Source: Octopus sinensis (lineage: Eukaryota). From it: a stretch of DNA of 64,000 bases. Shown piece after piece: positions 17,695 to 51,200 of this stretch. The DNA lies in the NCBI RefSeq assembly GCF_006345805.1, contig NC_043010.1, positions 52,328,001 through 52,392,000 on the forward strand, written 5' to 3'. The notes beneath the pieces were generated by a model. The model made no database searches and was not told the DNA's origin. It worked only from the letters and a program-made list of their open reading frames with translations. The position numbers were made by a program, and so were the translations under genes. Every line of letters starts with the position of its first letter. Positions within the stretch are counted from its first letter, which is position 1.

Positions 17695-17890
17695 AACTGC
17701 ATTTGAGCAATTTCTCGAACAAATAATTTTCATGTCTCCTGTACCACATAAACTCTGAGATATGAGTCAACCATACAATGGTGAGTGTCCCTGTCATTTA
17801 TTACCTCACTTTATAGAGGCTCATGCACTCTACACTTTTTGAGTCTGGCTTCAACAAACCCCAATTTTGTGGTTCACTGTTCTAAGCTTA
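17695..17890 (-). pseudogene. Merlin transposase C-terminal fragment
   Basis: Frameshifted translation TVNHK...MVDSYL/SEFMWYRRHENYLFEKLLKC, matching the Merlin C-terminus of other copies here. Confidence 0.6.
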
Positions 17891-18029
17891 AAATTGTAAC
17901 CGTGGTTATCTTTCAGCACCTTTGTAAAGAAGTAAATAAAAATTAAAAGGGGAGATAAATAAGTCAACTTGCTGTTAAACTATGTAGATGTTGGCTATAG
18001 CCATCAATAAAAAAAGAGCTGCCTAATAA

Positions 18030-18290
18030 TTTGACATGCAGAACTTCTGATGCACAACCACTTTGTGAGTATACACGCTGTCATTTAGGCTTCCAATATT
18101 GCTGTAGGATCACCAGCCGTGACTCTATGGGAGAATCCAGCATTGAATTAGATCAGATGATGTCTGTTCAGTACGCTCAGACACATCGACTAGTAAGCAT
18201 TTTTTGCAAATTCTTTCAATGCCACCGAAAAGCCAACGGCCAGGATGCCACTCACTGCGATATTACTTTTAATGGAGAAATTTACTTTCA
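18030..18290 (-). pseudogene. Merlin transposase fragment (lineage E)
   Basis: RWLFGGIERICKKCLLVDVSERTEQT...YTHKVVVHQ, DDE_Tnp_IS1595-type core. Confidence 0.7.
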
Positions 18291-18349
18291 GTGAGAATTT
18301 AATTATCTCTGCTAATTGTTATTTCCCCTTTAATATCATCATGCACTAA

Positions 18350-18760
18350 AGAATTACCTGTAACCGTCAATTTCAGTAATGTGAGAGTATGCCGTCCACA
18401 AATCACTGAAAACTTTTGGTTCCTGGAAGAATTGAGTGTTGTATGCATTCCTCCAATGTGTCATGATTCCAACATGGTGCCACAAAGAAAAAAATGGTCT
18501 CATTTCTTGACACTCCTCCAAAAGCCCACTGCTTGGGTAGGACCCTTCAGTTGTACTTGTCTTGAGAATACTATTTTGCCAATCTCGACAATCTTCCTAG
18601 GATCACCAACCTTAACTGGATGGCGGAGCGGGACCTCTTTGAATACTTTCCTGACATAGCTGTTATTATCAACAGCTGTGCAATGCAAGTACAAAACCGC
18701 ATCCTCTACTCTCCGTGTCTCCATGACAGACTCGAGGTTACAGGAGCTTGCTGCTATAAT
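18350..18760 (-). pseudogene. Merlin transposase fragment (lineage D, decayed)
   Basis: TAVDNNSYVR..GDPRKIVEIGK / LPKQWAFGGVSR..NHDTLEECI / IFSDLWTAYSHI, homologous to 43276-44210. Confidence 0.75.
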
Positions 18761-18861
18761 GAAACAGATGGGTAAAATATGGACACAAGCAGGGGAACAC
18801 AGCGTCCACACATGGTTTTACGTAGAATATTTTTTATCAACATGGGGGTAGAATATATTCC

Positions 18862-21800
18862 GGTACTTGTTAATAATCGTGGTCCCGGTTTTGCACACGC
18901 GAATTCGCGCGCGCGCGCGCGCCAGACGTAGGTACTCGATACTCGAGATCCTACGAGGTGACTTGCGCATGCGCAGTGCAGAATTCGCGCGTGCGCGTTA
19001 AACCCCCCCCCCCCCCCCGGAAAAAAAAAGGATTTTTTTTAAAGATACCTTTCTGCTTTTTAACACAAAAAGGTGTTGGATTTAACTAAAAATATATATA
19101 TGTGTGTGTGTGTGTGTATATATAACATATTCAATTTTACACAAAAAAATTACATAGTCGCTTTCCTCGCGGATTTACAGATAAATGAATTAATTACTAT
19201 TTTACAGAATAAAATTAATGAATTAATTATATAAATTAAATAATTCTTGAAAATTAATTATTATTAATACTCGAGATCCTACGAGGTGACTTGCGCATGC
19301 GCAGTGCGCGATTCGCGCATGCGGGTTAACCCCCCCCCCCCCCCGGAAAAAAAAAGGATTTTTTTTAAAGATACCTTGGTCGCTTTCCTCGCGGATTTAC
19401 AGATAAATGAATTAATTACTATTTTACAGAATAAAATTAATGAATTAATTATATAAATTAAATAATTCTTGAAAATTAATTATTATTAATAATATTTTTT
19501 GAACAAAGTAAAAAGTAATTACTTTTTTTTTACAGAAACGCGAACGGGGAATTTTCAGTTTAAAGTTTATAAATAAATACATTTCATGTGTAATGTAAAA
19601 TAGTAGTCAATTAAATACCTTCTTTTTCTGGGGTATTATTCGTTCAAACTCGTCACGTATTTGTAACTTTTCGATGTAAGTCTTAAAAAGTTGCAGCAGC
19701 TTAGCAGAAATGTCACGTTATAATTTCTACAATGCAATGGTTTCAATACACGCGGAAGATCATACCCATTCAAACTTTATATCATTCTGAAACATCTTTC
19801 AGAATATTCATCACACGACCGTTTTCATTTTGTCCAAATATTTTTTTTCACAGAAATTCATCAAAATTGTGGAGATTTTATGACAGTGTAGCAAATTAGT
19901 AATCAACTAATTAAATACCTTCTTTTTCTGGGGTATTATTCGTTCAAACTCGTCACGTATTTGTAACTTTTCGATGTAAGTCTTAAAAAGTTGCAGCAGC
20001 TTAGCAGAAATGTCACGTTATAATTTCTACCATGCAATGGTTTCAATACACGCGGAAGATCATACCCATTCAAACTTTATATCATTCTGAAACATCTTTC
20101 AGAATATTCATCACACGACCGTTTTCATTTTGTCCAAAAATACATTCGGGAGATCATACCCCTTCAAACTCTATACCATTCGGAAAGATGTTTCAGAATA
20201 TTCATCAAGCAATCGTGTGCAGTTTGCCCATATTGTTCCTTCCACAGAAACTCATCAAGGTACGAGTCCACCATGGTGGAATGTACCCCCATCATCGTTT
20301 TAAATTTTCTTTTGGCATTCTTCCAGTAACATTCCACAGAATTTGTGTGTACACCTGTTAGCGGATCCACAAAATTCTGGGAATGGTTTACTGTGAAATG
20401 GATGTATTTTGGTGTCACATCCATTTCTGCAATACCATTATAGGCGGGCCAGCAATCCAATGAATTGTTGTGCCCGGTCTAATAAATTTTTTGATGATGG
20501 GTAGCAGAGTTTCCGAGGAACGGTCAGCTACGAACAGTATGAAGCCTTTTTTGTCTTCTCTGTCGTACCCTCCAAAGACCCATCTCTCTTGTGGCGTTCT
20601 TCCTCTATTGTATTTTCTCTTACACATCAGACTTTCATCTACTTCAACAATGTGTCCGACACCACCAATTTGGTATGGATTCTTCATTAGATTATTGCTA
20701 CAGATATCTCGCATGTATTGATACCATTGAATAACGCTAGGTTTTGACAATCCAGTCATTGCTATTGCTCCTGTTATTGTTAGGTTACTGCCCCAACAAT
20801 ATATAACATGAATGAAATCGTGCAGTTTCAACTTGCTATTTTCGAGATACGATTTCTTTCTAATCGACTCTTTTTCCCCTTTGTGAGTTGGGCAGCGAAA
20901 AATTTTTTCCTGGTTGTGTTTTATAAGAGTCATCTCTCTATGGCATTTTGAGCAAATTGGAGTTGAGGAACTCAACACTTTTTTGTCCTTTAGGAATGAA
21001 TAGATACTGTCAAAATCTTTTACGATGCTTTCTATCTCATACAACATTTTTTCTTAATTTAACTCAGTTCAACTGATGAAGATAAACTGAAAATAAAGTT
21101 ATTTTCAGTATCAGTTAGCTGACTATCATTCAGTTAGCTCTGATTGGTTAGATTTTAGAACTTTCTCTGTCCCCTCTTTCAAACTAATTTTTGTTGTGGG
21201 GGGGGGGGAGAAAGATGAACGATTTAAAATAAATATATCTTAATTGTAGTGTGAGAAAAGTATATATATTCTGATGATAAAATATATTCTTTCAAAAACA
21301 TTTGTAGTCCTACTATGAAAGATTGTTTTGGGCTGAAACCCAAGTTAACGAAAGTACATGAATAAGGATTTGACTGTCATGATGTTGAGTCTTATTAGAT
21401 TCTTGTCCGATTCAGTATATTTGTCATGTGCTTTCTGAAGTAGGCAATAAAAACCTTATAAACAAACTGTTATCTACATAATACTGTGGTAATTAGACAA
21501 ACATTAACTGAAATTAATTATGCCTTTCCTAACAGAAAATGACATAATATGTATTTATTATGTGAACATGTAAAGGAAACTGAAAATTGTGATATGTTCC
21601 TCTCATTACTGGCACTTATTAACTTGAGAAAAATAAAAAGGCCACATATAGAATGAGATATTCGAAAATAAAAAAATGTTAAAAGATACTCCTCGGAATT
21701 AAAATCATGACAAAGATTTTCAAAATCCCTTTTTTGCGATAGATGGAGATTGCCTGAAGTAAATAAGGAGAAGGAGAGAGAAGACAGCAGAAGGAACAGC

Positions 21801-22797
21801 ATTGATGAATTTCTGTGAAAAAAAATATTTGGACAAAATGAAAACGGTCGTGTGATGAATATTCTGAAAGATGTTTCAGAATGATATAAAGTTTGAATGG
21901 GTATGATCTTCCGCGTGTATTGAAACCATTGCATTGTAGAAATTATAACGTGACATTTCTGCTAAGCTGCTGCAACTTTTTAAGACTTACATCGAAAAGT
22001 TACAAATACGTGACGAGTTTGAACGAATAATACCCCAGAAAAAGAAGGTATTTAATTAATTGACTACTATTTTACATTACACATGAAATGTATTTATTTA
22101 TAAACTTTAAACTGAAAATTCCCCGTTCGCGTTTCTGTAAAAAAAAAGTAATTACTTTTTACTTTGTTCAAAAAATATTATTAATAATAATTAATTTTCA
22201 AGAATTATTTAATTTATATAATTAATTCATTAATTTTATTCTGTAAAATAGTAATTAATTCATTTATCTGTAAATCCGCGAGGAAAGCGACCAAGGTATC
22301 TTTAAAAAAATCCTTTTTTTTTTCCGGGGGGGGGGGTTAACCCGCATGCGCGAATCGCGCACTGCGCATGCGCAAGTCACCTCGTAGCATCTCGAGTATT
22401 AATAATAATTAATTTTCAAGAATTATTTAATTTATATAATTAATTCATTAATTTTATTCTGTAAAATAGTAATTAATTCATTTATCTGTAAATCCGCGAG
22501 GAAAGCGACTATGTAATTTTTTTGTGTAAAATTGAATATGTTATATATACACACACACACACACATATATATATTTTTAGTTAAATCCAACACCTTTTTG
22601 TGTTAAAAAGCAGAAAGGTATCTTAAAAAAAATCCTTTTTTTTTTCCGGGGGGGGGGGGGTTTAACGCGCACGCGCGAATTCTGCACTGCGCATGCGCAA
22701 GTCACCTCGTAGGATCTCGAGTATCGAGTACCTACGTCTGGCGCGCGCGCGCGAATTCGCGTGTGCAAAACCGGGACCACGATTATTAACAAGTACC
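18862..22797 (-). mobile_element. Merlin DNA transposon (lineage A) with ~1-kb terminal inverted repeats
   Basis: 8-bp TSD TATATTCC (18854-18861 / 22798-22805). Arms 18862-19864 and 21802-22797 are near-identical inverted repeats starting GGTACTTGTTAATAATCGTGGTCCCGG. Confidence 0.93.
20164..21047 (-). pseudogene. Merlin (ISXO2/IS1595-like) DDE transposase, one 1-bp frameshift near 20460
   Basis: N-terminal CxxC...C-H, VEVDESLMCKRKYNRGR, IH(S)DCW, HTNSVECYW. ORFs 20415-21047 and 20164-20460 join. Confidence 0.92.
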
Positions 22798-23399
22798 TAT
22801 ATTCCTTACAGTCGCAGACATGGCTCATGATTGGCTAAAGTTACCTCAAATTTTCAAAATTCAGAAGCTAATAGTTCTCTATTTATGGCGAAAATGTTGT
22901 GGGGTGGGGTGCAAAGCCTTCCTATGTTTGGTCGGTGACAGCAACCTTATTTTGTCAATGTACATTTTTCTGGTTGGTTGATTCATCTTTGTCGTAACAC
23001 AAATTTTGTTTTAGTAGGATGTGTTGTCAGACATGTACACACATACACTAGACAGGCTTCTGCACGGTTTTCTTCCATAAGACGTTGGTCGACCTGAGAC
23101 TATAGACTCTTGCCCCTGTGTGTTGTGTAGTGGGATTGAACTTGATTCTGCGTGTTTGCAAAGTAAATTTCTTAATCATACATCCATGCCTGTAGTGATA
23201 AGAAACCGCTTTTTGTGCAACAAATAATTCTTTTAAATACTTCAAAATCAAAATTGAAGAATCTTTAAACAATCACACATTCACACAGCCTTAAAGATAA
23301 TCATTTGATCAGTGCATATCTCCACTAGGACCACATGTGGTTGGGTAAGGGAAAATCATTTACTAACGAAAATTTGTGTTAAAATAAAAATTGTCTGTA

Positions 23400-24534: not shown

Positions 24535-24539
<5 letters not shown>

Positions 24540-24630
<91 letters not shown>

Positions 24631-24866: not shown

Positions 24867-24959
24867 AGATTCTTTTTTATTAGAAATCGTCATAACTGTA
24901 ATGATGTATACATACATCTGTTTGCACACACATACAGAAGTGCATAAAGTTATGTAATT

Positions 24960-25315
24960 TCAATTTACTATTTTCAAGATAGGATTTCTTCCTAATTGAT
25001 ACTTTTTCCCCTTTGTGTGTTGGGCACCGAAATATCTTTTCTTTATGTTTTATCAGTCATTTCTCTCTGGCATTTTGCACAAAGCGGAGAAACGCTGCTC
25101 AAAATTTTTCTCCTTTAGGAAGGAATATATGGTATCGAAGTCTTTGACGATACTTTCTATCTCATATAACATATTTAATAATATTTAACAGACGTAATTA
25201 ATTTTATCTCACAGTTCATCTGGTGAAAATAAAGTATACAAGAGCACATGGTAAGAAGTCAGTTAGCTCTGATTGGTTAGATTTTAGAACTCTCTCTCTG
25301 TCCCCTCTTTCAAAC
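24960..25315 (-). pseudogene. 5' part and upstream region of a third, diverged Merlin lineage A copy
   Basis: Aligns with 42640-42985 and 20845-21185 (e.g. GATACTTTCTATCTCAT; CTCTGATTGGTTAGATTTTAGAAC). Confidence 0.75.
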
Positions 25316-25319
25316 TGTC

Positions 25320-25741
25320 GAATTTGCTCCAATAACTTTCCGAATATTTCGTCCTTAAATTCATAACGCCACATGAATTCGATGAGATGGGTCTGAAGTA
25401 AATTTCGGGCTGTTCCATTTTCTCTTTTGTTGCGATTCTTCACATGCTTCCATAAACATTCTATATGGTGGGTTGTGGCAAATCTTACCGGATCAACAAA
25501 ATTTATTGAATGATTCAAGGTCAAATGCCTGTATCCTAGCTGATTGAGCGTGTTATACGAACGCCAAAGGTCGGAAATTATGGTTGTACAAGGCAATATA
25601 TGCTCTTGTATAATTTGTAAAAGGGTGTCGGCTGTCCGATCTTCCACTGCCACTAAAAAATATCTTCTGGTATCACATCGCCGTGGCGATGGCAATATCG
25701 CGGTGATTAATTCCTTTTAGACTTGGATATGCAGAAGCCAT
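25320..25741 (-). pseudogene. Internally deleted Merlin transposase (lineage C)
   Basis: YFLVAVEDRTADTLLQIIQEHILPCTTIISDLWRSY...NHSINFVDP...HIECLW...EFMWR, fused to a short N-terminus MASAYPSLKGINHRD. Confidence 0.85.
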
Positions 25742-26034
25742 ATTGAAAATTTTTTCGCACGTGTTGATATCAAAGTGAAGAACATTCAAACTTTGAATTA
25801 CGCGCGGTTTCGGTGGTGGTCAGTGGTCATGCTGATTGGTGGATGTGATCGCGGTGGTGGTCATTTGTGCAGATTTGGTGTGATTTCTTTTTTAAAAACA
25901 ACAATAATGAATAAATAATGCAAGAATATATTTATTTATAATTAAAATTACACAAAGAAAAAGAAAAACGAAGTAATTTTGAAAATATTTATAAAATCAA
26001 ATCACACATATATACAAATCAAACAATATTCATA

Positions 26035-26990
26035 TCGTGAAAATTTGTTAAGCACCCTGCTCTACATAATGCAACCTTGCAGAATGCACATTGGAAAGTT
26101 GTTTCAACAGCCCTTCCACTAGGAGCTTTCCTTGTTTGATGAAGGCATTCACGACACTGCCTTTTGCGACCCTCCATTTTTTTCTAATTTATGGAGATCG
26201 GCTGAATTCAGAAGGATATCCCTCTGGCAGGCATTGCTTTTTCTCCCTACGGTTATTTTTTTTTTTTAGGAATAACCAGCTCTTAGTTGCGTTACTACAT
26301 CTGCTCGGAACTGTAGATGGTCGCATCGCTTCCGAGCCGGTCCTGATTTGGCATATAGTATAAACACATTAGTAATACTCATGTTTACTATATACCAAAC
26401 CAGTTATCGTGACCATTTATTCCCCGGTCTGCCAACTGGATAGTAAGACATCATCTGATTCAGCCGATCTACTCCACCCATCTACTTGTTATAATCAAGG
26501 TTCACAAACGGCGTGCCATTTTCATCCACATGTGGCCGTGCACAGGTAGACAGACAATTGATCGCGGTCGCTAGCAAATTTCCTTTCTGCCGTTGATGGC
26601 AATATCGCGGTGATTAATTCCTTTTAGACTTGGATATGCAGAAGCCATTTCACCTTTTTTTTTATATCCAACGGCAGTCCTTTTCTACTAGCGATCACTG
26701 TAGCACATGTATGTGTTGCCACAGTATCTAAATTCTCTGCAAGTTTGATCGAACTGAAAAATCGGTCAATAAAATAATATACGGCCCTGGTTATGGTATG
26801 GAAGTGATAAATTCCAGACCACATCGTACCCTAGGCCATGCTGACTTACATGATTGTCTCTTTTGCCTGTATAAAATTCGAATCCTGAGCAGCACCCAGT
26901 ATTTGATTCGCAAATCTTCCAAACTTTGATCCCCCATTTTGTGGGCTTTCGGGGCATATACTGTCAGAAACGTACCCGGCCTTTATAGCC
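26035..26990 (-). pseudogene. piggyBac transposase, 3' half including cysteine-rich domain
   Basis: YMPRKPTKWGIKVW, DRFFSS, DYNK.MGGVDRLNQ, and CRECLH...CAFCKVALCRAGCLTNFH. Confidence 0.9.
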
Positions 26991-27120
26991 CACCATCATT
27001 CTATATGCATGTGTAATAAATACATACACGTATAAATTTCTTATTAGAGTACTGAACTCCTTGTTTCATTATTTGACTCCCATACTTTGGGACCATTTTT
27101 GAAAGTCTTTTTGAACTAAG

Positions 27121-27163: not shown

Positions 27164-27259
27164 AGGCCGACCTCATATTCACTTTGAATAAGGTTTAAAA
27201 AAGGAAAAAGGTTTTTATTTACAAGCATTTCATTAATCACATTACACAAAATACTTCCA

Positions 27260-27552
27260 CCTTGATTCTGGTTGTTTTTCTTCCCAGATATGAGTGTGAA
27301 AGAATTACTTTGTCTGTTTTTACAGTTCTTGCTGCCATCCTCCAAGCAGTTTCTTCAGTTCTAAGCTATACTACCACAGTGCCGTACCTATTTCCTCCTC
27401 TGTCTTCCTGAGTCAATGAGGGGTGTTATTTGGTTCTTCACGTACTGGTGTACTGCTCAGGTCTCTTATACGTAAATGCTGTGACCTGACGTCATTTAGG
27501 AAGCGCCCTTGCTTCCAGTTCGACGACAGGCTACGCACATTTATGCAGCCCA
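27260..27552 (-). mobile_element. L1/Tx1-like LINE pieces (ORF1 fragment + APE N-terminus), chimeric module copy
   Basis: GTVVV.LRTEETAWRMAARTVKTDKVIL..GRKTTRIKVE and VGCINVRSLSSNWKQGRFLNDVRSQHL. Confidence 0.65.
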
Positions 27553-28040
27553 CACTCAGATGAAAGGTATCAAAATTTTTTTTTTGGCTACTCGCTCTAT
27601 CCCACCGAAAAGCCGGATAGTTTTTGGGAGTCTTCCACAATTATACTTTCTTCTTACAATAACTGTTTCATTAATCTCTACTTCAACTCCTGGTCCACCG
27701 ATTTGGTCCTGGTAATTTTCAGCCCCAATGCTGACAAACCTCCAAGCAGAAGGATCGCCAATCAATCGAGGTCGGATATGAAATGTTTAAATTTTCCATG
27801 ACTAATGCATGCGACCAACAGTCTGTAAGGAAGTAATTTACAAATAACAGGATTTTACAGGGTGGTATCTGACTCCCCTCGAAAAAAAGTGTTGTTGTAT
27901 AGCGATATAGAATATCCACATTGCGTTGGCCTTTGTCTTCGGCGGCGAACAGTCCTTCCACATCAGAAGATGCTTGTATTTTCGTGGAGTGTACATTGTA
28001 AATGGCATCTAGGGCAGTCAACTGTGCAAAATATTTCCAC
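27552..28040 (-). pseudogene. Merlin transposase (lineage B), truncated copy
   Basis: CPRC..., SIDWRSFCLEVC, IGGPGVEVEINETVIVRRKYNCGR. Confidence 0.85.
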
Positions 28041-28250
28041 CTTGATTCTGGTTGTTATTCTTCCCAGATATGAGTGTGGGTGTACTGCTCAGGTCTCTTA
28101 TACGTAAATGCTGTGACCTGACGTCATTTAGGAAGCGCCCTTGCTTCCAGTTCAACGACAGGCTACGCACATTTATGCAGCCTACCTGAATGCGAGACAT
28201 CACCTACCTTAAATGGTCATCTTTGTTTTTTCGGCTGTTCGTGGGATGAA
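28040..28250 (-). mobile_element. LINE APE N-terminus, chimeric module copy
   Basis: IQVGCINVRSLSLNWKQGRFLND (ORF 28018-28203). Confidence 0.65.
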
Positions 28251-28251
28251 A

Positions 28252-29100: not shown

Positions 29101-29129
29101 CAATTTGGTTTTTCACATACTGGTAAAGT

Positions 29130-30010: not shown

Positions 30011-30019
30011 ATCAATAAT

Positions 30020-31253: not shown

Positions 31254-31289
31254 ATTATTACACACAGTTGCAGGTTGACTTTTCATGGC

Positions 31290-31540: not shown

Positions 31541-31569
31541 TCTAAAGTAGTCTTGTTAGAGCCCCTTTA

Positions 31570-34262: not shown

Positions 34263-34270
34263 TATAACTT

Positions 34271-38740: not shown

Positions 38741-38802
38741 CTATCTGAGAAAAATTAAGTGTCTGCTTGTTCAAACGATGATGAAAGTATATACACACAC
38801 AC

Positions 38803-41157: not shown

Positions 41158-41379
41158 TATATATGTATACAATAATATATGTTGTACATACCTTAATTTT
41201 TTCATGATATTGTAGCGATTTTATGACAGTGTAGCAAAATAGTAGTCAATTAGATAAATACATTTTTTTTCTGGGGTATTTTTTTTCAACCTCGTCACAT
41301 ATTTGCACCTTTCAATTTAAGTCTTAATTAAGCAATTGCGGCAGCTTAGCAGAAATGTCACGTTCTAATTTCTGTTATT

Positions 41380-42062
41380 CAATGGTTTCAATACACTCGT
41401 GACATCATACCCCTTCAAATTTTATACCATTCTGAAAGATGTTTCAGAATATTCATCTCACAATCGTTTTCATTTTGTCCATACTGTTCCTTCCACAGAA
41501 ACTCAAGGTACGAGTCCACCATGGTGGAATGTATCCTCATCATCGTTTTAAATTTTCTTTTCAATGGTTTCAATACACGCGTGACATCATACCCCTTCAA
41601 ATTTTATACCATTCTGAAAGATGTTTCAGAATATCATCACACAATCGTTTTCATTTTGTCCATACTGTTCCTTCCACAGAAACTCAAGGTACGAGTCCAC
41701 CATGGTGGAATGTATCCTCATCATCGTTTTAAATTTTCTTTTCAATGGTTTCAATACACGCGTGACATCATACCCCTTCAAATTTTATACCATTCTGAAA
41801 GATGTTTCAGAATATTCATCACACAATCGTTTTCATTTTGTCCATACTGTTCCTTCCACAGAAACTCAAGGTACGAGTCCACCATGGTGGAATGTATCCT
41901 CATCATCGTTTTAAATTTTCTTTTCAATGGTTTCAATACACGCGTGACATCATACCCCTTCAAATTTTATACCATTCTGAAAGATGTTTCAGAATATTCA
42001 TCACACAATCGTTTTCATTTTGTCCATACTGTTCCTTCCACAGAAACTCAAGGTACGAGTCC
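41380..42062. repeat. ~182-bp tandem repeat (about 3.7 units) of the Merlin A 3' coding end
   Basis: Unit starts CAATGGTTTCAATACAC at ~41380, 41563, 41744, 41926. Confidence 0.9.
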
Positions 42063-42840
42063 ACCATGGTGGAATGTACCCCCATCATCGTTTTAAATTT
42101 TCTTTTTGCATTTTTCCAGTAACATTCCACAGAATTTGTGTGTACACCTGTTAGCGGATCCACAAAATTCTGGGAATAGTTTACTGTGAAATGGATGTAT
42201 TTTGGTGTCACATCCATTTCTGCAATCCCATTATAGGCGGCCCAGCAATCCGAATGAATTGTTGTGCCCTGTCTAATATATTTTTTGATGATGGGTAGCA
42301 GAGTTTCCGAGGAACGGTCACCTACGAAGAGTAGGAAGCCTTTTTTCTCTTCTCTATCATAACCTCCAAAGACCCATCTCTCTTGTGGTGTTCTCCCTCT
42401 ATTGTACTTCCTCTTGCACATCAGACTTTCATCTATTTCAACAACTTTTCCGACACCACCAATTTGGTATGGATTGTTGACCAGATTGTTACTACAGATA
42501 TCTCGCATGTATTGGAACCATTGAATAACGGTACATTTTGACAATCCAGTCATTGCTATTGTTGCTGTTATTGTTAGGTTATTGCCCCAACAATATATTA
42601 TATGTATGAAATCATGTAGTTTCAATCTGCTATTTTCGAGATAGGAGTTCCTTCTAATTGATTCTTTTTCCCCTTTGTGAGTTGGGCAGCGAAATACTTT
42701 TTCTTGATTGTGTTTTATCAGTCATCTCTCTCTGGCATCTCGAACAATTTGGCGAAGAGCAACTTAAAGACCTTTTTGTCCTTGAGGAAGGAATAAATAC
42801 TATCAAAGTCTTTCACGATACTTTCTATCTCATACAACAT
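41960..42840 (-). pseudogene. Merlin lineage A transposase, frameshift near the 5' end
   Basis: MLYEIESIVKDF.. start, VEIDESLMCKRKYNRGR, IHSDCWAAY, HTNSVECYW. Confidence 0.92.
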
Positions 42841-43639
42841 TATTTTTTAATTTTATCTCACAGTTCAACTGGTGAAGATAAAGTGAAAATAACTAATAAA
42901 GTTATTTTCACTATCGTGGTAAGAAGTCAGTTAGCTCTGATTGGTTAGATTTTAGAACTTTCTCTGTCCCCTCTTTCAAACTAATTTTTGTTGTGGGGGG
43001 GGGGGGAGATGAACGATTTAAAATAAATATATCTTAATTGTAGTGTGAGAAAAGTATATATATTCTGATGATAAAATGTTTTTGAAAGAATATATTTTTA
43101 TAAAAATCTAGAATATATATACTTTTCTCACACTACAATTAAGATATATTTATATGTCAATCATAGAACGATATGTACCACAAAGTCGCTTGTTACCCCA
43201 TTTCAAACACGCCCAAGTACTCTCTATTTGTTGGGTGTGTGTTATCAACGGAGTCAACAAACTCGATGCTGTGGTTCACCATTCTGTCAAATTGTATCCC
43301 TCGATCTCTGGAATATGTGAATAAGCCCTCCACAGGTCACTAAATATTGTGGTACCTGGGAGGATTGAGCGACGGATGCATTCTTCGAGTGTGTCGCAAT
43401 TCCGACAAGGTACTGCATAAAGGAAAACTTCTCTGGTCTCACGACACACCCCACCGAATACCCATTGCTGAGGTAAACACCCTTCCTCGATTAAACTTCC
43501 TCCTACAGAAGACTGTCTTGACAATCTTCCCAGGACCACCTATTACAATTGGGTTCATTAGCAAGTCATGCGCGCATATTTCTCGCACATAATTGTTGTA
43601 GTCCACAGCTGAACCGTGGCTCATCCCCAGTTCGAATGT

Positions 43640-43800
43640 AGCTGTTGTGTACATGAAGCATGTTTTGCAGTCTGAGCAGCGTGTCCCTGTCGAAATTGTC
43701 AGCGTCAGTGTTTGCAGGTTGTGGAATTACGCCCAAAAGGCACATCAAGTTTCCTATTGTAATTTGAAATGAAATAAATTTGAAGGAACGAAGGTTTGCA
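43640..43800 (-). pseudogene. Helitron Rep/helicase-like fragment between duplicated Merlin D segments
   Basis: NFDRDTLLRLQNMLHVHNSYIR resembles the LQ.MLH..N.Y motif of Helitron RepHel N-terminal regions. Confidence 0.55.
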
Positions 43801-44419
43801 ATTTTGTACAAGGTACTGCATAAAGGAGAACTTCTCTGGTCTCACGACACACCCCACCGTATACCCATTGCTGAGGTAACACCCTTCCTCGATTAAACTT
43901 CCTCCTAGAGAAGACTCTCGTCTATCTCGACAATCTTCCCAGGACCACCTATTACAATTGGGTTCATTAGCAAGTCATGCGCGCATATTTCTCGCACATA
44001 ATTGTTGTAATCCACAACTGAACCGTGGCTCATCCCCAGTTCTTCTACACAATAACGCACTGTAGTCAGTTCCTTGACCCAAGAGTACAAAAAAAGGACT
44101 ACGGTCTGCAGAGGGAGCGTGCAGCCTTCAAGCCATGTTCCCTTCCGGACAGACAACTCCTGATTGCAGCCTTTGCGATTACACCGCCAGCAAACATTAT
44201 TCGCTACCAATTTATCATGCGGTGCCCTTTTTTACACTTCTTATTGCTAGGTGTAATAACCTTTGCTGCCAAGAAAGATGCATCTTCCGATTTCATGGTA
44301 ACAAACAACTCACCTAGACTAGCCTATATATATGTCTTTATTACCCATAAAGGGCTAAACAGAGGGGACATAAAACATCACAATTACATAAATATGGAAA
44401 TTGAAATACGAAAATGATA

Positions 44420-44890
44420 AATGAAAAATATCCCATTCTGGTATTCTCAGTCAATTGTTCTAATATTTCAGGCTCCGCATGCATGTTCAATTCCAAAACT
44501 GCACCCCCCCCAGCCTTCATATCTCGTGCACTCACCTCAAGAGCGCTATGGTTCATTATTGCTTTCACAAAATCTGTCCATTTCTTCTCACATGACCCTA
44601 CTGTCAAATGGAGGAGAGTCTGGCCTTATTAGTTCTTCACATTCATCTCGCTGCTCCGAGATATTAAGAGCGTCACAGCATCCGTTTTATGGCTATTCAC
44701 AGTATCATGTAAGGCTGTCCAACCACGGAAGTGTCTTTGCATCTATAAACATCTCAATTATTCTTCTGTTGCCGTTTACACAGGCAAACATTAAAGGAGT
44801 TTGGTTTTGAATTTTACGGATACTGCAGTGTCTACTCCTTCAGCCAACTTTATGAAGGTTTGAAGCGTTTCTAACGTCATGTTAGGTTCC
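44420..44890 (-). pseudogene. Ankyrin-repeat gene fragment
   Basis: GSCEKKWTDFVKAIMNHSALEVSARD, same family as 37270 and 45360. Confidence 0.7.
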
Positions 44891-45360
44891 TAAAAGAGGC
44901 AAATTTCGGTCTGGTACATATCTTGGAAAGGGAAAGAAGATGTACCTTGTATTGTTTCTGAATATCGAAAGAGTTGTGCAATACTGCGACAAATATATGA
45001 TTTTCCACTACTTGGGACTCCTTTAAGTACGAAAGTGTTTGTTTTTGGAAGTTTTTGATTTAGAAGATTCCATACGTCTGTTACAAATTCATCTATAAGA
45101 ATGTTTTGTACTTTCAATATATTTTGAAATATACGTAGTGATGTAGCTACAGTGTGATATTCACGAACATGGAATTTATTCCATTTCATGTTTTGGAATT
45201 TAGTGGCGAGTATTTCCATTTTGCATGAATCGGCCACATTTCTGGCTATTGAATCAAACATAGGATGAGCTAAAGCTCCTAAGAAATTTTCATTGTTTTG
45301 CTTCTGGCACCACTCTTGCTTCATCTTAATGAGTGCATATTCTTTGAGTCCGGATAACTA
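44890..45360 (-). pseudogene. NS1: Endogenous parvovirus-like NS1 fragment embedded in the ankyrin array
   Basis: ENFLGALAHPMFD...KTNTFVLKGVPSSGKSY...IQGTSSFPFQDMYQTEICLF. Open 144 aa, related to 34271-34770. Confidence 0.83.
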
Positions 45361-48300
45361 TTTAATATAGTTGAACAATTTCATTGATCTACCTGCAGTG
45401 TTTATCTTGTGGATTCACCAGAACTGCGCACTGTTGCAATGATACTGCCTCCACATCTGTCCATTCCTTCTCACATGACCCTGCAGCCAAATGGAGGGGA
45501 GTCTGGCCATATTAGTTCTTTACATTCACCTCGATCCTCTGAGATATTAAGATTTTCACGGCTTCAAGCTGACGCCTTTACACAGCATCATGTAGAGCTG
45601 TCCAACCACAGAAGTGTCTTGCATCTATAAACATCTCAATTATTCTTGTGTTGCCCCTTACATGGGAATACATTAAAGGAGTTTGTCCCCTTACATTACG
45701 TTTGTGAATTTGATCTGGATTCTTCTCTGTTAAGGTTTTCACACCTTCAGCGTCATCATCATTGATTTTATCAAAGATTGTATAATACGCTCCTGAACTG
45801 CCTCTGGTGTGTTACCACCTTTGTCCACCACATTGACATCGATGCCATTTTACTCAACATGCCAACTGTGTTTGTGTATCCACTTGAACAGGCACAGTAT
45901 AGATGTGTGTGACCCTTATCTCGTGCATTCACCTCCAGAGCGCTATGTTTTATTAATGCTGCCACGACATCTGTCCATTCCTTCTCACATGACCCTGCTG
46001 CCAGATGGAGAGGAGTCTGGCCGTATTAGTTCTTCACATTCACCGCGCTGCTCCGAGATATTAAGAGCTTCACAGCATCCGTTTTATGGCTATTCACAGT
46101 ATCATGTAAGTCTATCCAACCACGGAATTGTCTTGCATCTATAAACATCTCAATTATTCTTCTGTTGCCATTTACACAGGCAAACATTAAAGGAGTTTGT
46201 CCCTTTAATTTGATCTGGCTTCTTCTCTATTAAAGTTTTCACACCTTCAGCATCATCATATCTGGATTCATTCTTCACATTCACCTCGCTGCTCCGAGAT
46301 ATTAAGAGCGTCACAGCATCAGTTTTATGGTTATTCACAGTATCATGTAAGTCTTTCCAACCACGGAATTGTCTTGCATCTATAAACATTTCAATTATTC
46401 TTCTGTTGCCGTTTACACAGGCAAACATTAAAGGAGTTTGTCCCCTTACATTAGGTTTGTGAATTTGACCTGGCTTCTTCTCTATTAAGGTTTTCAAACC
46501 TTTAGTGTCACCATCTTTGATTTTATCAAAGATTGTATAATACGCCATGTCTTCAGATTCGATTATTGGGTTTTTATTCTGGGTTATGTATATGTTTTTG
46601 TGTATCCACTTGAACAGGCACAGAGTAGAGGTATGCGACCATTCTTATCTCTTGCATTCACCAGAACACCGCTCTGTTGCAATAATACTGCCATCCCATC
46701 TGTCTATTCCTTCTCACATGACCCTGCGGCCAAATGGAGGGGAGTCTGGCCATATTAGTTCTTTACATTCACCTCGATGCTCCGAGATATTAAGAGCTTC
46801 ACTGCTTGATGTTGATGCCTATTCTCAGCATCATGTAAAGATGTCCAACCACGGAAGTGTCTTGCATCTATAAACATCTCAATTATTCTTGTGTTGACCC
46901 TTACATGGGAATACATTAAAGGAGTTTGTCCCCTTACATTACGCTTGTGAATTTGATCTGGATTCTTCTCTATTAAGGTTTTCACACCTTCAGCGTCATC
47001 ATCATTGATTTTATCAAAGATTGTATAATACGCTCCTGAACTGCCTCTGGTGTGTTACCACCTTTGTCAACCGCATTGACATCGAGCCATTTTACTCAAC
47101 ATCGCAACTGTGTTTGTGTATCCACTTGAACAGCACAGTATAAGAGGTGCGACCTATCTCGTGCATTCACCTCAAGAGCGCTATGTTTTATTAATGCTGA
47201 CACAACATCTGTCCATTCCTTCTCACATGACCCTGCTGCCAGATGGAGAGGAGTCTGGCCGTATTAGTTCTTCACATTCACAGCGCTGCTCCGAGATATT
47301 AAGAGCTTCACAGCATCCGTTTTATGGCTATTCACAGTATCATGTAAGGCTATCCAACCACGGAATTGTCTTGCATCTATAAACATCTCAATTATTCTTC
47401 TGTTGCCATTTACTCAGGCAAACATTAAAGGAGTTTGTCCCCTTAATTTGATCTGGCTTCTTCTCTATTAAAGTTTTCACACCTTCAGCATCATCATATC
47501 TAGATTCATTCTTCACATTCACTGCGCTGCTCCGAGATATTAAGAGCGTCACAACATCCGTTTTATGGTTATTCACAGTATCATGTAAGGCTATCCAACC
47601 ACGGAATTGTCTTGCATCTATAAACATCTCAATTATTCTTCTGTTGCCATTTACTCAGGCAAACATTAAAGGAGTTTGTCCCCTTAATTTGATCTGGCTT
47701 CTTCTCTATTAAAGTTTTCACACCTTCAGCATCATCATATCTAGATTCATTCTTCACATTCACTGCGCTGCTCCGAGATATTAGGAGCGTCACAACATCC
47801 GTTTTATGGTTATTCACAGTATCATGTAAGGCTATCCAACCACGGAATTGTCTTGCATCTATAAACATCTCAATTATTTTTCTGTTGCCGTTTACACAGG
47901 CAAACATTAAAGGAGTTTGTCCTCTTAATTTGATCTGGCTTCTTCTCTATTAAAGTTTTCAAACCTTCAGTGTCACCATCTTTGATTTTATCAAAGATTG
48001 TATAATACGCCATGTCTTCAGATTCGATTATTGGGTTTTTATTCTGGGTTATGTATATGTTTTTGTGTATCCACTTGAACAGGCACAGAGTAGAGGTATG
48101 CGACCATTCTTATCTCTTGCATTCACCAGAACACCGCTCTGTTGCAATAATACTGCCATCCCATCTGTCTATTCCTTCTCACATGACCCTGCGGCCAAAT
48201 GGAGGGGAGTCTGGCCATATTAGTTCTTTACATTCACCTCGATGCTCTGAGATATTAAGAGCTTCACTGCTTGATGTTGATGCCTATTCTCAGCATCATG

Positions 48301-50370
48301 TAAAGATTAACCACGGAAGTGTCTTGCATCTATAAACATCTCAATTATTCTTGTGTTGACCTTACATGGGAATACATTAAAGGAGTTTGTCCCCTTACAT
48401 TACGCTTGTGAATTGATCTGGATTCTTCTCTATTAAGTTTTCACACCTTCAGCGTCATCATCATTGATTTTATCAAAGATTGTATAATACGCTCCTGAAT
48501 GCCTCTGGTGGTTACCACCTTTGTCAACCACATTGACATCGCTGCCATTTTACTCAACATGCCAACTGTGTTTGTGTATCCACTTGAACAGGCACAGTAT
48601 AGATGTGTGCGACCCTTATCTCGTGCATTCACCTCAAGAGCGCTATGTTGTATTAATGCTGCCACAACATTCTGTCATTCCTTTCACATGACCCTGCTGC
48701 CAGATGTGGAGAGGAGTCTGGCCGTATTAGTTCTTCACATTCACAGCGCTGCTCCGAGATATAAGAGCTTCACAGCATCCGTTTTATGGTATTCACAGTA
48801 TCATGTAAGTCTATCCAACCACGGAATTGTCTTGCATCTATAACATGTCAATTATTCTTCTGTTGCCGTTTACACAGGCAAACATTAAAGGAGTTTGTCC
48901 TCTTAATTTGATCTGGCCTCTTCTATTAAAGTTTTCACACCTTCAGCATCATCATATCTGGATTCATTCTTCACATTCACCTCGCTCCTCCGAGATATTA
49001 AGAGCGTCACAACATCCGTTTTATGGTTATTCACAGTATCATGTAAGGCTATCCAACCACGGAATTGTCTTGCATCTATAAACATCTCAATTATTCTTTT
49101 GTTGCCGTTTACACAGGCAAACATTAAAGGAGTTTGTCCCCTTACATTACGTTTGTGAATTTGATCTGGATTCTTCTCTATTAAGGTTTTCACACCTTCA
49201 GCGTCATCATCATTGATTTTATCAAAGATTGTATAATACGCTCCTGAACTGCCTCTGGTGTGTTACCACCTTTGTCAACCACATTGACATCGCTGCCATT
49301 TTACTCAACATGCCAACTGTGTTTGTGTATCCACTTGAACAGGCACAGTATAGATGTGTGCGACCCTTATCTCGTGCATTCACCTCAAGAGCGCTATGTT
49401 TTATTAATGCTGCCACAACATCTGTCCATTCCTTTTCACATGACCCTGCTGCCAGATGGAGAGGAGTCTGGCCGTATTAGTTCTTCACATTCACAGCGCT
49501 GCTCCGAGATATTAAGAGCTTCACAGCATCCGTTTTATGGCTATTCACAGTATCATGTAAGTCTATCCAACCACGGAATTGTCTTGCATCTATAAACATG
49601 TCAATTATTCTTCTGTTGCCGTTTACACAGGCAAACATTAAAGGAGTTTGTCCTCTTAATTTGATCTGGCCTCTTCTCTATTAAAGTTTTCACACCTTCA
49701 GCATCATCATATCTGGATTCATTCTTCACATTCACCTCGCTCCTCCGAGATATTAAGAGCGTCACAACATCCGTTTTATGGTTATTCACAGTATCATGTA
49801 AGGCTATCCAACCACGGAATTGTCTTGCATCTATAAACATCTCAATTATTCTTTTGTTGCCGTTTACACAGGCAAACATTAAAGGAGTTTGTCCCCTTAC
49901 ATTACGTTTGTGAATTTGATCTGGATTCTTCTCTATTAAGGTTTTCACACTTTCAGCGTCATCATCATTGATTTTATCAAAGATTGTATAATACGCTCCT
50001 GAACTGCCTCTGGTGTGTTACCACCTTTGTCTACCACATTGACATCGATGCCATTTTACTCAACATGGCAACTGTGTTTGTGTATCCACTTGAACAGGCA
50101 CAGTATAGATGTGTGCGACCCTTCTTAATCTCGTGCATTCACCTCAAGAGCGCTAAGTTTTATTAATGCTGCCACAACATCTGTCCATTCCTTCTCACGT
50201 GACCCTGCTGCCAAATGGAGAGGTGTCTGGCCATATTTGTTCTTCCAGTTTATCTCGCTTCTCTGAGTTATTAAGAGCTTCACAGCTTCAGTTTGATGGT
50301 TATTCACAGCATCATGCAAAGCTGTCCAACCACGGAAGTCTCTTGCTTCTATGTACGCTGCCGCTAGCAG
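45360..50370 (-). repeat. ~5-kb tandem array of rearranged, decayed intronless ankyrin-repeat gene copies
   Basis: Marker TGATTTTATCAAAGATTGTATAATACG recurs at ~45765, 46520, 47010, 47985, 48470, 49215, 49970. GQTPLMFACVNG, VNARDKG repeated. Confidence 0.85.
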
Positions 50371-50574
50371 ATTTCCTGTCTGCTGTTGGGTTATTTACAG
50401 TACTGGGAATAATATTGTTTGCGAAAGAAATCTAGTCCCTCACTGTCATTATTAAATTGGCGAATTCCATCTTGTAATGTCAGGTCACAAGAATTGTGAA
50501 GTGCCATTCTGTTGTTGAAGACCAAGTGTATCATACAACTTAACGCTTGTGTACTATTTATTACTTGATAAATC

Positions 50575-50650
50575 ATCTGGTTCATCCGATGTACACTGTG
50601 CCTATGTACCTGTTATGATTGAGGTTCACAAACAGGGTGCCATTTTATCT
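50575..50650 (-). pseudogene. Short piggyBac fragment
   Basis: NGTLFVNLNHNRYIG..RMNQM, similar to NGTPFVNLDYNK.MGGVDRLNQM at ~26450-26520. Confidence 0.5.
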
Positions 50651-50654
50651 GCCT

Positions 50655-50760
50655 CTTATCTCTTTAAGTTTAATACATTCAAGGACCTTCTTCATTATGG
50701 TATCATACATTGGATGGCTTATAGCTCTCATGAAATTTTCTTTGTGTTTATTTAGCCAAT
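50655..50760 (-). pseudogene. NS1: Short NS1 fragment (same lineage as 34271-34770)
   Basis: KENFMRAISHPMYDTIMKKVLECIKLK versus NFMRAISHPMYDTAMKKVLECIKLK. Confidence 0.75.
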
Positions 50761-51200
50761 GAGATTTCATTTCTTACTGGTGAAAATATACGTGGTGAGG
50801 GAATGGGTGGGGTTGTCAATGGTAAGAGAGATGTCAAGGAAGTTAACAGAGGTGTCAGAGATAGAAGTGAATTGAAGAGAAGGGTGGAAGCTAGAAGAAA
50901 GAGATGAAGTGGCAGTTGTTCATGGGAGAGGGAGGTGGCACCTATAGTCATCTATGTAGCGACCATATAGCTCTGGGGCCAGCCTGGAGAATTGAGAGAA
51001 TGCTTGGGGCTCATTCTCATCCCCATCATGACTCCAGACTCCTGTTGGTAGGTTTCCCCAGCGAACGTAAAGCAGTTGAGGGTGAGGATGAGCTCTGCCA
51101 GGTGGAGAAGGGTGGGGGTGCTGAGTGTGGGGTCAGGGTGACGATCGAGGAAGTATTGGAGGGCTAAGAGACCATCGTTGTGTGGAATTACCGTGTATAG
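50760..51200 (-). pseudogene. Penelope-like element reverse transcriptase fragment
   Basis: TLLHLAELILTLNCFSFAGETYQQ.SGV.MG, GRYIDD (50947-50958), FHPSLQFT, VNFLDISLTI. Confidence 0.85.

What the first reader, a model, noticed from the sequence alone, without database searches (positions are those of the whole stretch)
17695..51200. Candidate uni-strand (flamenco-like) piRNA cluster: a 33-kb archive of transposon and virus fragments, all on one strand
Seen: more than 30 coding fragments from Merlin (5 lineages), piggyBac, Tc1, Helitron, Penelope, CR1, RTE, L1/Tx1-like LINEs, CRESS Rep, parvovirus NS1 and ankyrin genes are packed almost end to end. All read on the minus strand, except the ~150-bp inverted copy inside a Merlin TIR. 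Even counting only ~20 independent events, chance is about 2 x 0.5^20. Outside the block, orientations are mixed (plus-strand CR1 at 54.7 kb, SINEs both ways). Known: Drosophila flamenco and mosquito EVE-rich piRNA clusters show this antisense bias relative to a single long precursor. Inference: a plus-strand transcript through this block would give piRNAs antisense to every captured element, making it a cephalopod anti-transposon and antiviral memory locus. I know of no description of such a locus in octopus, but I cannot check the literature here.
Basis: partly seen in the sequence, partly recalled or inferred. Interest (0 to 1): 0.92.

Follow-up and report, generated by a model that had tools for sequence, protein, structure and literature searches.

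The report
One-strand transposon and virus-fragment cluster
A 33-kb stretch of a probable cephalopod genome holds about 15 broken transposon and virus gene fragments that all read on one strand, the layout of a small-RNA (piRNA) defence locus, but no RNA data were available to show that it works as one.

Summary
The core observation holds. In 17.7-51.3 kb, every coding remnant that Pfam or BLAST detects lies on the minus strand. These are Merlin (4-5 lineages), piggyBac, Tc1, one LINE RT piece, one unclassified RT piece, a CRESS Rep fragment, three mutually divergent NS1-type helicase fragments, and ankyrin-derived repeats. The same screens on the plus strand found nothing, apart from the inverted copy in a Merlin terminal repeat.

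The count is inflated. The 15 ankyrin segments come from one tandem array, and some Merlin copies are local duplicates. That leaves about 15 events, or 10 on a conservative count, with none opposite (two-sided p about 6e-5 to 2e-3). Helitron, Penelope, RTE and L1/Tx1 were not reproduced.

The flanks are mixed and poor in coding remnants: a LINE on plus, a mariner on minus, and SINE-like copies both ways. Those SINE-like copies are almost absent from the block.

A cuttlefish locus, fetched only because it holds an NS1 homolog, shows the same packing. About seven elements sit on one strand and none on the other.

A uni-strand piRNA-cluster-like trap is the best reading (about 0.45). It is untested: there are no small-RNA or transcript data, and the direction of transcription is unknown. 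If true, it is a new member of a known kind.

The parts
18128..18817 (-). Merlin-like transposase remnant (related to Merlin-D), left of the Merlin-A1 element
   Evidence: tblastn and blastp similarity to the window's other Merlin segments; no Pfam hit of its own
18851..22804 (-). Merlin-A1 element. It has about 1-kb terminal inverted repeats at 18851-19864 and 21802-22804 (97.5% identical). Broken transposase remnants lie at 20073-21053. The only plus-strand hit in the block (21795-21893) is the inverted repeat copy.
   Evidence: self-blastn; DDE_Tnp_IS1595 E 3.8e-5; tblastn. No clear target-site duplication seen.
24883..25716 (-). Merlin-B transposase fragment
   Evidence: DDE_Tnp_IS1595 E 3e-12; 73-77% DNA identity to Merlin-A
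26034..26999 (-). piggyBac transposase fragment (DDE core in two frames plus C-terminal zinc finger)
   Evidence: DDE_Tnp_1_7 E 6e-14 and 1e-5, zf-Tnp_2 E 5e-5
27247..29548 (-). Merlin-C copies A (27247-28253) and B (28323-29548), adjacent direct copies
   Evidence: DDE_Tnp_IS1595 E 5.6e-14; 88-96% DNA identity to copy C
31284..31559 (-). LINE reverse-transcriptase fragment
   Evidence: tblastn E 1e-14 with the flank LINE ORF as probe; weak RVT_1 E 5e-3
32484..34263 (-). Merlin-C copy C, with the Rep fragment lying inside its transposase region
   Evidence: collinear with copy B except for about 410 extra bases; DDE_Tnp_IS1595 E 1e-3; tblastn
32656..32964 (-). CRESS-DNA-virus Rep fragment. Only the N-terminal endonuclease domain is present, as a stop-free stretch of 103 aa. 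The helicase part is absent.
   Evidence: Viral_Rep E 4.9e-23, profile 3-82 of 82
34286..34689 (-). NS1-type SF3 helicase fragment c, truncated at both ends. No break within the 68-aa aligned stretch.
   Evidence: Parvo_NS1 E 7.6e-6; tblastn; 26-39% identical to fragments a and b
35940..36852 (-). NS1-type helicase fragment a, from the multi-copy cephalopod parvovirus-like family. It is truncated at both ends and has one frameshift and one in-frame stop.
   Evidence: Parvo_NS1 E 1.3e-13; 42 homolog clusters at 48-80% identity, the top ones 62-68%; break counts
37294..38754 (-). Solo ankyrin-derived unit with a 189-bp x 5 internal minisatellite (366-aa stop-free stretch)
   Evidence: Ank E 1e-25; TRF; translation; only distant generic Ank relatives
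39102..43077 (-). Merlin-A2 element: terminal-repeat piece at 39102-39494 and body at 41209-43077, with a 182-bp x 4 tandem repeat. It is split by the nested Tc1.
   Evidence: 89% DNA identity to Merlin-A1; DDE_Tnp_IS1595 E 7.8e-17; TRF
39889..40748 (-). Tc1-type transposase remnant nested in Merlin-A2, spread over three frames (at least two frameshifts)
   Evidence: HTH_SB, HTH_Tnp_Tc3_2 and DDE_3 in three different frames
43156..44231 (-). Merlin-D transposase remnant
   Evidence: blastp and tblastn similarity to other Merlin segments; no Pfam hit of its own
44344..50394 (-). Ankyrin-derived tandem array of about 750-bp monomers with higher-order periods of 1.24-2.7 kb. Counts as one orientation event.
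   Evidence: self-blastn; Ank hits in 15 segments; tblastn; TRF
44794..45357 (-). NS1/E1-type SF3 helicase fragment b, inserted between ankyrin units. It is truncated and has one in-frame stop.
   Evidence: PPV_E1_C E 1.7e-7, Parvo_NS1 E 3.9e-5; break count
50848..51296 (-). Reverse-transcriptase fragment of an unclassified retroelement. It marks the right edge of the one-strand block.
   Evidence: homologs carry RVT_1; tblastn; no Pfam or PDB hit of its own
54697..57752 (+). Flank control: LINE with endonuclease and RT on the plus strand
   Evidence: RVT_1 E 3.4e-30, Exo_endo_phos_2 E 4.8e-10; tblastn
59248..59580 (-). Flank control: mariner N-terminal DNA-binding domain on the minus strand
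   Evidence: HTH_48 E 5e-22; SETMAR and Mos1 in PDB, E 2e-24

Best explanation
The block is a transposon and virus-fragment trap in which successive, often nested insertions have been kept in one orientation only. The most likely reason is that it is a single long non-coding transcription unit processed into piRNAs, that is, a uni-strand piRNA cluster.

Shown: about 15 separate insertions of unrelated families lie on one strand. They were laid down over time, some inside others. The same layout recurs in a second cephalopod.

Inferred: the plus strand is transcribed, so the RNA is antisense to every captured element. Insertions in the other orientation gave no benefit or truncated the precursor, and were lost. 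The resulting small RNAs silence Merlin, piggyBac, Tc1 and retroelements, and possibly parvovirus-like and CRESS-like viruses.
For: - All credible Pfam hits on stop-free segments lie on minus (about 35 of 128 minus segments against 0 of 148 plus segments), and the frames with X at stops agree.
- tblastn puts all hits on minus except the terminal-repeat copy.
- Nesting shows separate events in time: Tc1 inside Merlin-A2, Rep inside Merlin-C, helicase fragment b and Merlin-A2/D inside the ankyrin array.
- The three NS1-type fragments are only 26-39% identical to each other, so they are separate integrations.
- The flanks are not biased.
- AT skew is coherent across the block.
- Cuttlefish locus L001, chosen only for an NS1 homolog, has Ty3/Gypsy, mariner, Tc1, piggyBac, Merlin and two NS1 pieces all on one strand and nothing on the other. 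No annotated gene spans it.
- Literature: strand bias found flamenco-like clusters in Drosophila, and small-RNA sequencing confirmed those tested (PMC10643416). Mosquito core clusters hold co-oriented antisense EVEs (10.1101/2022.08.22.504762). Mollusc clusters are enriched in DNA transposons (PMC6128900). Octopus has abundant piRNA-producing loci (PMC12479628).
Against: - There are no small-RNA, transcript or chromatin data, so the defining features are untested and the direction of transcription is a guess.
- The block has no LTR or Gypsy content, and at about 33.6 kb it is far smaller than flamenco-like loci (227-1085 kb).
- The abundant SINE-like family of the flanks is nearly absent, which is odd for a trap of active elements.
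- Most fragments look old, whereas mollusc clusters were reported to hold young elements (PMC6128900).
- About 7.5 kb is an ankyrin-derived tandem repeat that the model does not explain.
- The genome-wide frequency of such bias is unknown, and the window was picked after the fact.
Confidence: 0.45

Rival explanations
1. The block lies inside a long host transcription unit, such as an intron of a plus-strand gene or a long non-coding RNA not linked to piRNAs. Insertions in the sense orientation carried polyadenylation or splice signals and were removed by selection, leaving only antisense ones.
For: Cephalopod genes have very long introns (general knowledge). No Pfam-detectable host exon was found in the window, so the window could be intronic. 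An antisense bias of intronic TEs is well established in vertebrates (general knowledge).
Against: The known intronic bias is modest and weakest for DNA transposons, whereas here it is complete and dominated by DNA transposons. The flanks of the same window are not biased. For L001, the assembly's own annotation lists no gene spanning the locus.
Confidence: 0.17
2. Chance plus local duplication. The region is a TE-dense, possibly heterochromatic graveyard. Direct tandem and segmental duplications copied a few founders, so the real number of orientation events is small.
For: The ankyrin array, the three Merlin-C copies and the two Merlin-A copies are direct repeats. The 15 Ank segments collapse to one or two events. 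The window was selected after the fact from a scan.
Against: After collapsing every duplicate, at least 10 unrelated families remain, with none opposite (p about 2e-3). The three helicase fragments are mutually divergent. Nesting shows separate insertions. An independently chosen cuttlefish locus repeats the pattern with about 7 of 7 elements on one strand.
Confidence: 0.15
3. An orientation-biased insertion or repair mechanism that does not involve small RNAs. For example, integration could be coupled to the direction of replication or transcription at a fragile or open site, so that incoming DNA is captured in one polarity.
For: The Rep and NS1-type proteins belong to single-strand DNA replicons, for which strand-specific integration is conceivable (inference). 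The SINE-like family avoids the block, which hints at unusual chromatin or accessibility.
Against: No such bias is known for cut-and-paste DDE transposons (Merlin, piggyBac, Tc1), which make up most of the block (general knowledge). Retroelement pieces share the orientation too.
Confidence: 0.08
4. The block is one giant composite mobile or virus-like element, such as a gene-capturing Helitron-type element, whose cargo is co-oriented by construction.
For: Gene fragments captured by rolling-circle elements are often co-oriented (general knowledge).
Against: No Helitron_like_N or PIF1 signal on either strand. No terminal repeats join the block's two edges. The contents are themselves nested elements, one with its own terminal repeats. 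The cuttlefish locus shares the families but not the DNA.
Confidence: 0.03

Closest known systems
Drosophila flamenco and flamenco-like uni-strand piRNA clusters (PMC10643416)
   Same: Dense, nested, truncated transposon fragments almost all in one orientation. The locus can be found from TE strand bias alone. It has discrete edges against unbiased flanks.
   Different: Flamenco-type loci are 227-1085 kb and their bias is carried by Gypsy-type endogenous retroviruses. This block is about 33.6 kb and is made of DNA transposons, single-strand DNA virus fragments and an ankyrin-derived repeat, with no LTR element. piRNA output and a promoter have not been shown here.
Aedes core piRNA clusters rich in endogenous viral elements (10.1101/2022.08.22.504762; PMC6797480)
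   Same: Several independent virus-derived fragments sit among transposon fragments and share their orientation.
   Different: The mosquito EVEs derive mostly from non-retroviral RNA viruses and are tied to LTR retrotransposons. Here the fragments come from parvovirus-like and CRESS-like DNA viruses. No virus-matching small RNAs have been shown.
Mollusc piRNA clusters in Lymnaea stagnalis and Crassostrea gigas (PMC6128900)
   Same: Same phylum. Those clusters are strongly enriched in DNA transposons, and piRNAs are expressed in soma and germline.
   Different: Those clusters were defined from small-RNA reads and were reported to hold young elements. TE orientation was not described in the passages read. 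The fragments here are mostly degenerate.
Antisense bias of transposons in introns of vertebrate genes
   Same: One-orientation enrichment of transposons relative to a transcription unit.
   Different: That bias is partial and weakest for DNA transposons. Here it is complete.

Membership tests
Uni-strand (flamenco-like) piRNA cluster | Region dense in nested, truncated transposon fragments | tested here: met
   About 15 remnants in 33.6 kb against 2 in 30 kb of flank. Tc1 lies in Merlin-A2, Rep in Merlin-C, and a helicase fragment in the ankyrin array.
Uni-strand (flamenco-like) piRNA cluster | Strong strand bias of the transposon fragments | tested here: met
   All credible coding hits lie on minus and none on plus, apart from a terminal-repeat copy. 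AT skew is coherent.
Uni-strand (flamenco-like) piRNA cluster | Abundant 24-31 nt 1U small RNAs from one strand, antisense to the elements | not testable with these tools
   No read data could be reached. Public octopus small-RNA libraries exist (PMC12479628).
Uni-strand (flamenco-like) piRNA cluster | One long precursor transcript from a promoter at one end | not testable with these tools
   No transcript data. No Rfam family or tRNA in the window. Window ORFs are not on record in the contig index.
Uni-strand (flamenco-like) piRNA cluster | Enrichment of Gypsy-type LTR retroviruses carrying the bias | tested here: not met
   No RT_RNaseH, integrase or other LTR-element domain in the block on either strand. 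The cuttlefish locus does hold one Ty3/Gypsy element.
Uni-strand (flamenco-like) piRNA cluster | Size of hundreds of kilobases | tested here: not met
   Biased coding remnants span 18128-51296. The right flank is mixed. The left flank has no coding remnants, so the left edge is soft.
EVE-bearing piRNA cluster of the Aedes type | Independent virus-derived fragments embedded among transposons and co-oriented with them | tested here: met
   Three mutually divergent NS1-type fragments and one Rep fragment, all on minus. The same holds in L001.
EVE-bearing piRNA cluster of the Aedes type | Small RNAs antisense to the cognate viruses | not testable with these tools
   No read data.
Intronic antisense transposon bias | The block lies within a spliced host transcription unit on the opposite strand | tested here: inconclusive
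   No Pfam-detectable host exon anywhere in the window, but short exons would be missed. For L001 no annotated gene spans the locus.
Tandem or segmental duplication array | The co-oriented pieces are DNA-level copies of one another | tested here: not met
   True for the ankyrin array, Merlin-C x3 and Merlin-A x2. Not true for piggyBac, Tc1, Rep, the three helicase fragments, the two RT pieces, or Merlin-B and Merlin-D.
Helitron-type gene-capturing element | Rep/helicase gene remnants of the Helitron type, or defined termini bounding the block | tested here: not met
   No Helitron_like_N or PIF1 hit on either strand. No repeat links the two edges.

The most novel reading that the evidence does not exclude
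Cephalopods keep heritable, one-stranded archives of DNA transposons and single-strand DNA viruses (parvovirus-like and CRESS-like). These archives would be transcribed into antisense piRNAs, and the architecture would be shared by octopus-like and cuttlefish lineages. That would extend EVE-based, piRNA-mediated antiviral memory from arthropods to lophotrochozoans, and from RNA viruses to DNA viruses.
Probability: 0.3. Interest if true: 0.8.

Novelty: new member of a known kind. Interest (0 to 1): 0.6.

Why it matters
Uni-strand piRNA clusters with co-oriented transposons and viral fragments are well described in flies and mosquitoes. I found no description of one in a cephalopod in the held literature.

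If the locus makes one-strand piRNAs, it would show that the trap architecture exists outside arthropods, that it can be built mainly from DNA transposons, and that it records DNA viruses. The cuttlefish replicate suggests a general feature of the clade rather than a single odd locus.

The claim can be tested directly with public small-RNA and RNA-seq data and a genome-wide strand-bias scan. If those tests are negative, the locus still poses a question: what keeps about 15 unrelated insertions in one orientation?

Tried and rejected
I used stop-free segments and typed frames with X at stops instead.
- Searching the 366-aa ankyrin stretch returned only generic 25%-identical ankyrin proteins and no informative relative.
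- Looking up three window ORFs in the contig index, to find the source contig and its gene models, found nothing on record.
- The Pfam scan of ten long flank segments was empty. The mariner was then located through PDB.
- The RT-like piece at 51 kb has no Pfam or PDB match of its own. Its RT nature rests on homologs that carry RVT_1. A Penelope assignment could not be tested.
- No Helitron, RTE or L1 signal was found.
- Rfam and tRNA scans of the window were empty.
- No clear target-site duplication was seen at the ends of Merlin-A1.
- PDB searches of three long plus-strand segments of L001 were empty.
- ENA loci L004-L006, anchored on RT homologs, come from unidentified animals.
- Considered and rejected: a giant composite element (no linking termini), and a functional ankyrin gene (high-identity tandem units broken by many stops).
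Full report
**Observation.** These were 128 stretches of at least 50 aa on the minus strand and 148 of at least 53 aa on the plus strand.
- The minus strand gave Ank in 15 segments, the Merlin/IS1595 DDE domain in 6, Parvo_NS1 in 3, the piggyBac DDE in 2, the papillomavirus-type helicase in 2, the CRESS Viral_Rep domain in 1, and Tc1 domains in 2-3.
- The plus strand gave two marginal, unrelated hits at about 1e-4.
- Degenerate fragments can be missed by a stop-free screen. I therefore also scanned whole frames with X at stops for the parts of the block that had no annotation. On the minus strand this added a weak RVT_1 hit, a third NS1 piece and the positions of piggyBac and Tc1. On the plus strand it added nothing at E 0.01 or better.
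- A local tblastn used the window's own transposon segments, the flank LINE ORFs and 42 fetched NS1 homologs. It put every hit in the block on the minus strand except 21795-21893. That hit is the copy of a Merlin-A sequence inside the right arm of a 1-kb inverted repeat (18851-19864 and 21802-22804, 97.5% identical).
- Base composition agrees without any annotation. AT skew on the plus strand is -0.114 in the block, -0.056 in the left flank and 0.000 in the right flank.

**What is in the block.** Reading along the minus strand's features in window coordinates:
- a Merlin-like remnant (18128-18817);
- a Merlin-A element with both long terminal repeats (18851-22804);
- Merlin-B (24883-25716);
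- a piggyBac transposase fragment with its zinc finger (26034-26999);
- two adjacent Merlin-C copies (27247-29548);
- a LINE RT piece (31284-31559);
- a third Merlin-C copy (32484-34263), which carries a CRESS Rep endonuclease-domain fragment inside its transposase region (32656-32964, E 4.9e-23);
- two NS1-type helicase fragments (34286-34689 and 35940-36852);
- a solo ankyrin-derived unit with a 189-bp minisatellite (37294-38754);
- a second Merlin-A element (39102-43077) split by a nested Tc1, whose transposase is spread over three frames (39889-40748);
- Merlin-D (43156-44231);
- an ankyrin-derived tandem array of about 750-bp monomers (44344-50394), with a third helicase fragment inserted between units (44794-45357);
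- an RT fragment (50848-51296) whose homologs carry RVT_1.

These placements rest.

The viral genes are all truncated.
- Helicase fragment a has one frameshift and one in-frame stop.
- Fragment b has one in-frame stop.
- Fragment c has no break in its short aligned stretch.
- The Rep piece is a stop-free N-terminal domain without the helicase part.

- The fifteen ankyrin segments are not independent. They belong to one tandem array plus a solo unit, which probably formed one array later split by the Merlin insertions at 39-44 kb.
- The ankyrin sequence has only distant, generic relatives. With its high-identity repeats and many stops, it looks like an amplified pseudogene rather than a working gene.
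- Merlin-C occurs as three neighbouring copies and Merlin-A as two copies 89% identical.
- No Helitron, Penelope, RTE or L1/Tx1 signal was found on either strand. The retroelement content I can support is one LINE RT piece and one unclassified RT piece.
- Counting each family copy that is not an obvious local duplicate gives about 15 orientation events. Collapsing every family to one event gives 10. With none opposite, the two-sided binomial probability is 6e-5 to 2e-3. This does not allow for the number of windows the scan examined.

**Independence of the events.** Several facts argue that these are separate events in time and not one duplication.
- Tc1 lies inside Merlin-A2.
- Rep lies inside Merlin-C copy C and is absent from the collinear copy B.
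- Helicase fragment b lies between ankyrin units.
- The three helicase fragments are only 26-39% identical to each other in overlapping regions of the protein.
- Merlin-A1 still has 97.5%-identical terminal repeats, whereas other Merlin remnants are far more decayed.

**Flanks.** The same Pfam screen on the 30.5 kb outside the block found only one LINE on the plus strand (54697-57752; RVT_1 3.4e-30 with its endonuclease) and one mariner DNA-binding domain on the minus strand. I placed the mariner at 59248-59580 through its match to SETMAR and Mos1 structures. A SINE-like family of about 390 bp has some 18 copies or pieces in the flanks in both orientations, but only one 58-bp piece inside the block. 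Its right edge is near 51.3 kb. Its left edge is soft, because the left flank has no coding remnants at all.

**A second locus.** Helicase fragment a belongs to a multi-copy family. It has 42 clusters of homologs at 48-80% identity (the best-scoring ones 62-68%). Almost all come from short assembled contigs of public read sets, plus one annotated protein of the cuttlefish Acanthosepion pharaonis. One short contig carries a parvovirus capsid phospholipase domain on the same strand as NS1, so the family is parvovirus-like. I did not print or join those contigs.

I fetched 20.8 kb around the cuttlefish gene (L001) and ran the identical screen.
- On the NS1 strand there are RVT_1, two RNase H families, four integrase-related families (a Ty3/Gypsy element), mariner (HTH_48 and Transposase_1), Tc1 (DDE_3), piggyBac and Parvo_NS1.
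- On the other strand there is nothing credible.
- tblastn adds a Merlin piece, a second NS1 piece and a longer parvovirus-like stretch with capsid-like and NS1-like parts (7057-10819), all on the same strand. The mariner catalytic domain is at 19264-19707 on that strand.
- AT skew is +0.106 on that strand.
- Only the NS1 region is similar to the window at the DNA level (67%), so this is not the same locus.
- The assembly's annotation lists no gene spanning it.

That makes about seven elements with none opposite, in a locus chosen only because it holds an NS1 homolog.

**Interpretation.** One-orientation packing of unrelated, nested elements together with viral fragments is the structural signature of uni-strand piRNA clusters.
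- In Drosophila, a sliding-window search for one-strand LTR enrichment found new flamenco-like loci, and small-RNA sequencing confirmed those for which data were available (PMC10643416).
- Mosquito core clusters are enriched for viral fragments in antisense orientation (10.1101/2022.08.22.504762).
- Mollusc clusters are strongly enriched in DNA transposons (PMC6128900).
- Octopus bimaculoides has thousands of small-RNA loci with piRNA signatures (PMC12479628).

I therefore take a uni-strand piRNA-cluster-like trap as the best explanation, at about 0.45. The steps that would make it so were not testable here: plus-strand transcription, processing into piRNAs, and selection for antisense insertions. 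The direction of transcription is assumed by analogy.

Points against are the lack of any LTR or Gypsy element in the block, its small size, the near absence of the local SINE-like family, the old look of most fragments, and the unexplained ankyrin array.

**Rivals.**
- A long host transcription unit with selection against sense insertions (0.17) would give a bias in the same direction. The known intronic bias is partial and weakest for DNA transposons, and the flanks of the same window are unbiased.
- Chance plus duplication (0.15) is weakened by the ten unrelated families, the nesting and the cuttlefish replicate. It cannot be dismissed without a genome-wide null.
- A small-RNA-independent polarity of insertion or repair (0.08) has no precedent for cut-and-paste transposons.
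- A single composite element (0.03) lacks termini and Helitron genes.

**Novelty and verdict.** I found no description of a cephalopod piRNA cluster, uni-strand or otherwise, in the held literature. Parvovirus-related sequences in molluscs are known (PMC5013282, listed). If confirmed, this would be a new member of a known kind. Its composition would be unusual (DNA transposons plus DNA-virus fragments), and it would be the first hint that the architecture is shared across cephalopods. Interest: 0.6.

Noticed in passing
L001 1-20822 (Acanthosepion pharaonis CAHIKZ030000499.1:821841-842662): A cuttlefish locus fetched only for its NS1 homolog shows the same one-strand packing. Ty3/Gypsy, mariner, Tc1, piggyBac, Merlin and two NS1 pieces are all on the NS1 strand, and nothing is on the other. 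It includes a longer parvovirus-like stretch with capsid-like and NS1-like parts at 7057-10819. Its breaks were not counted and its sequence was not printed.
   Followed up: partly
window 775-1163 (reference copy); copies at 0.7-5.4 kb, 12.9 kb and 51.9-63.0 kb: A SINE-like family of about 390 bp has roughly 18 copies or pieces in the flanks in both orientations, but only one 58-bp piece (23674-23731) inside the 33-kb block. The block seems closed to this family, or to differ from it in age.
   Followed up: partly
window 37294-38754 and 44344-50394: An ankyrin-repeat coding sequence has been amplified into a satellite-like array. It has monomers of about 750 bp, higher-order periods of 1.24-2.7 kb, a 241-bp sub-repeat, and a 189-bp x 5 minisatellite in the solo unit. 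It has no close protein relative. Its origin (host gene or large DNA virus) is unknown.
   Followed up: partly
window 32484-34263: A CRESS-virus Rep endonuclease-domain fragment lies inside the transposase region of one Merlin-C copy. It is missing from the otherwise collinear copy at 28323-29548.
   Followed up: partly
L007-L016 (Logan contigs from runs ERR12921337/41, ERR12945500, ERR14857108, SRR9969973/4, SRR29271461-78): Contigs of 1.5-3.7 kb carrying identical NS1-family proteins recur in many separate sequencing runs, most of them nearly the same in gene layout. All their called ORFs are on one strand, including a 444-559 aa ORF upstream with no Pfam hit. I did not determine whether these runs are DNA or RNA, or which species they come from.
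   Followed up: no
window 41378-42106 and 24576-24864: A 182-bp x 4 tandem repeat (98% matches) lies inside Merlin-A2 where Merlin-A1 has a single unit. A 290-bp (TC)n tract gives spurious long ORFs on both strands.
   Followed up: no
window 1-17694: The whole left flank has no Pfam-detectable coding remnant on either strand, so the left limit of the one-strand block cannot be fixed from coding evidence.
   Followed up: partly
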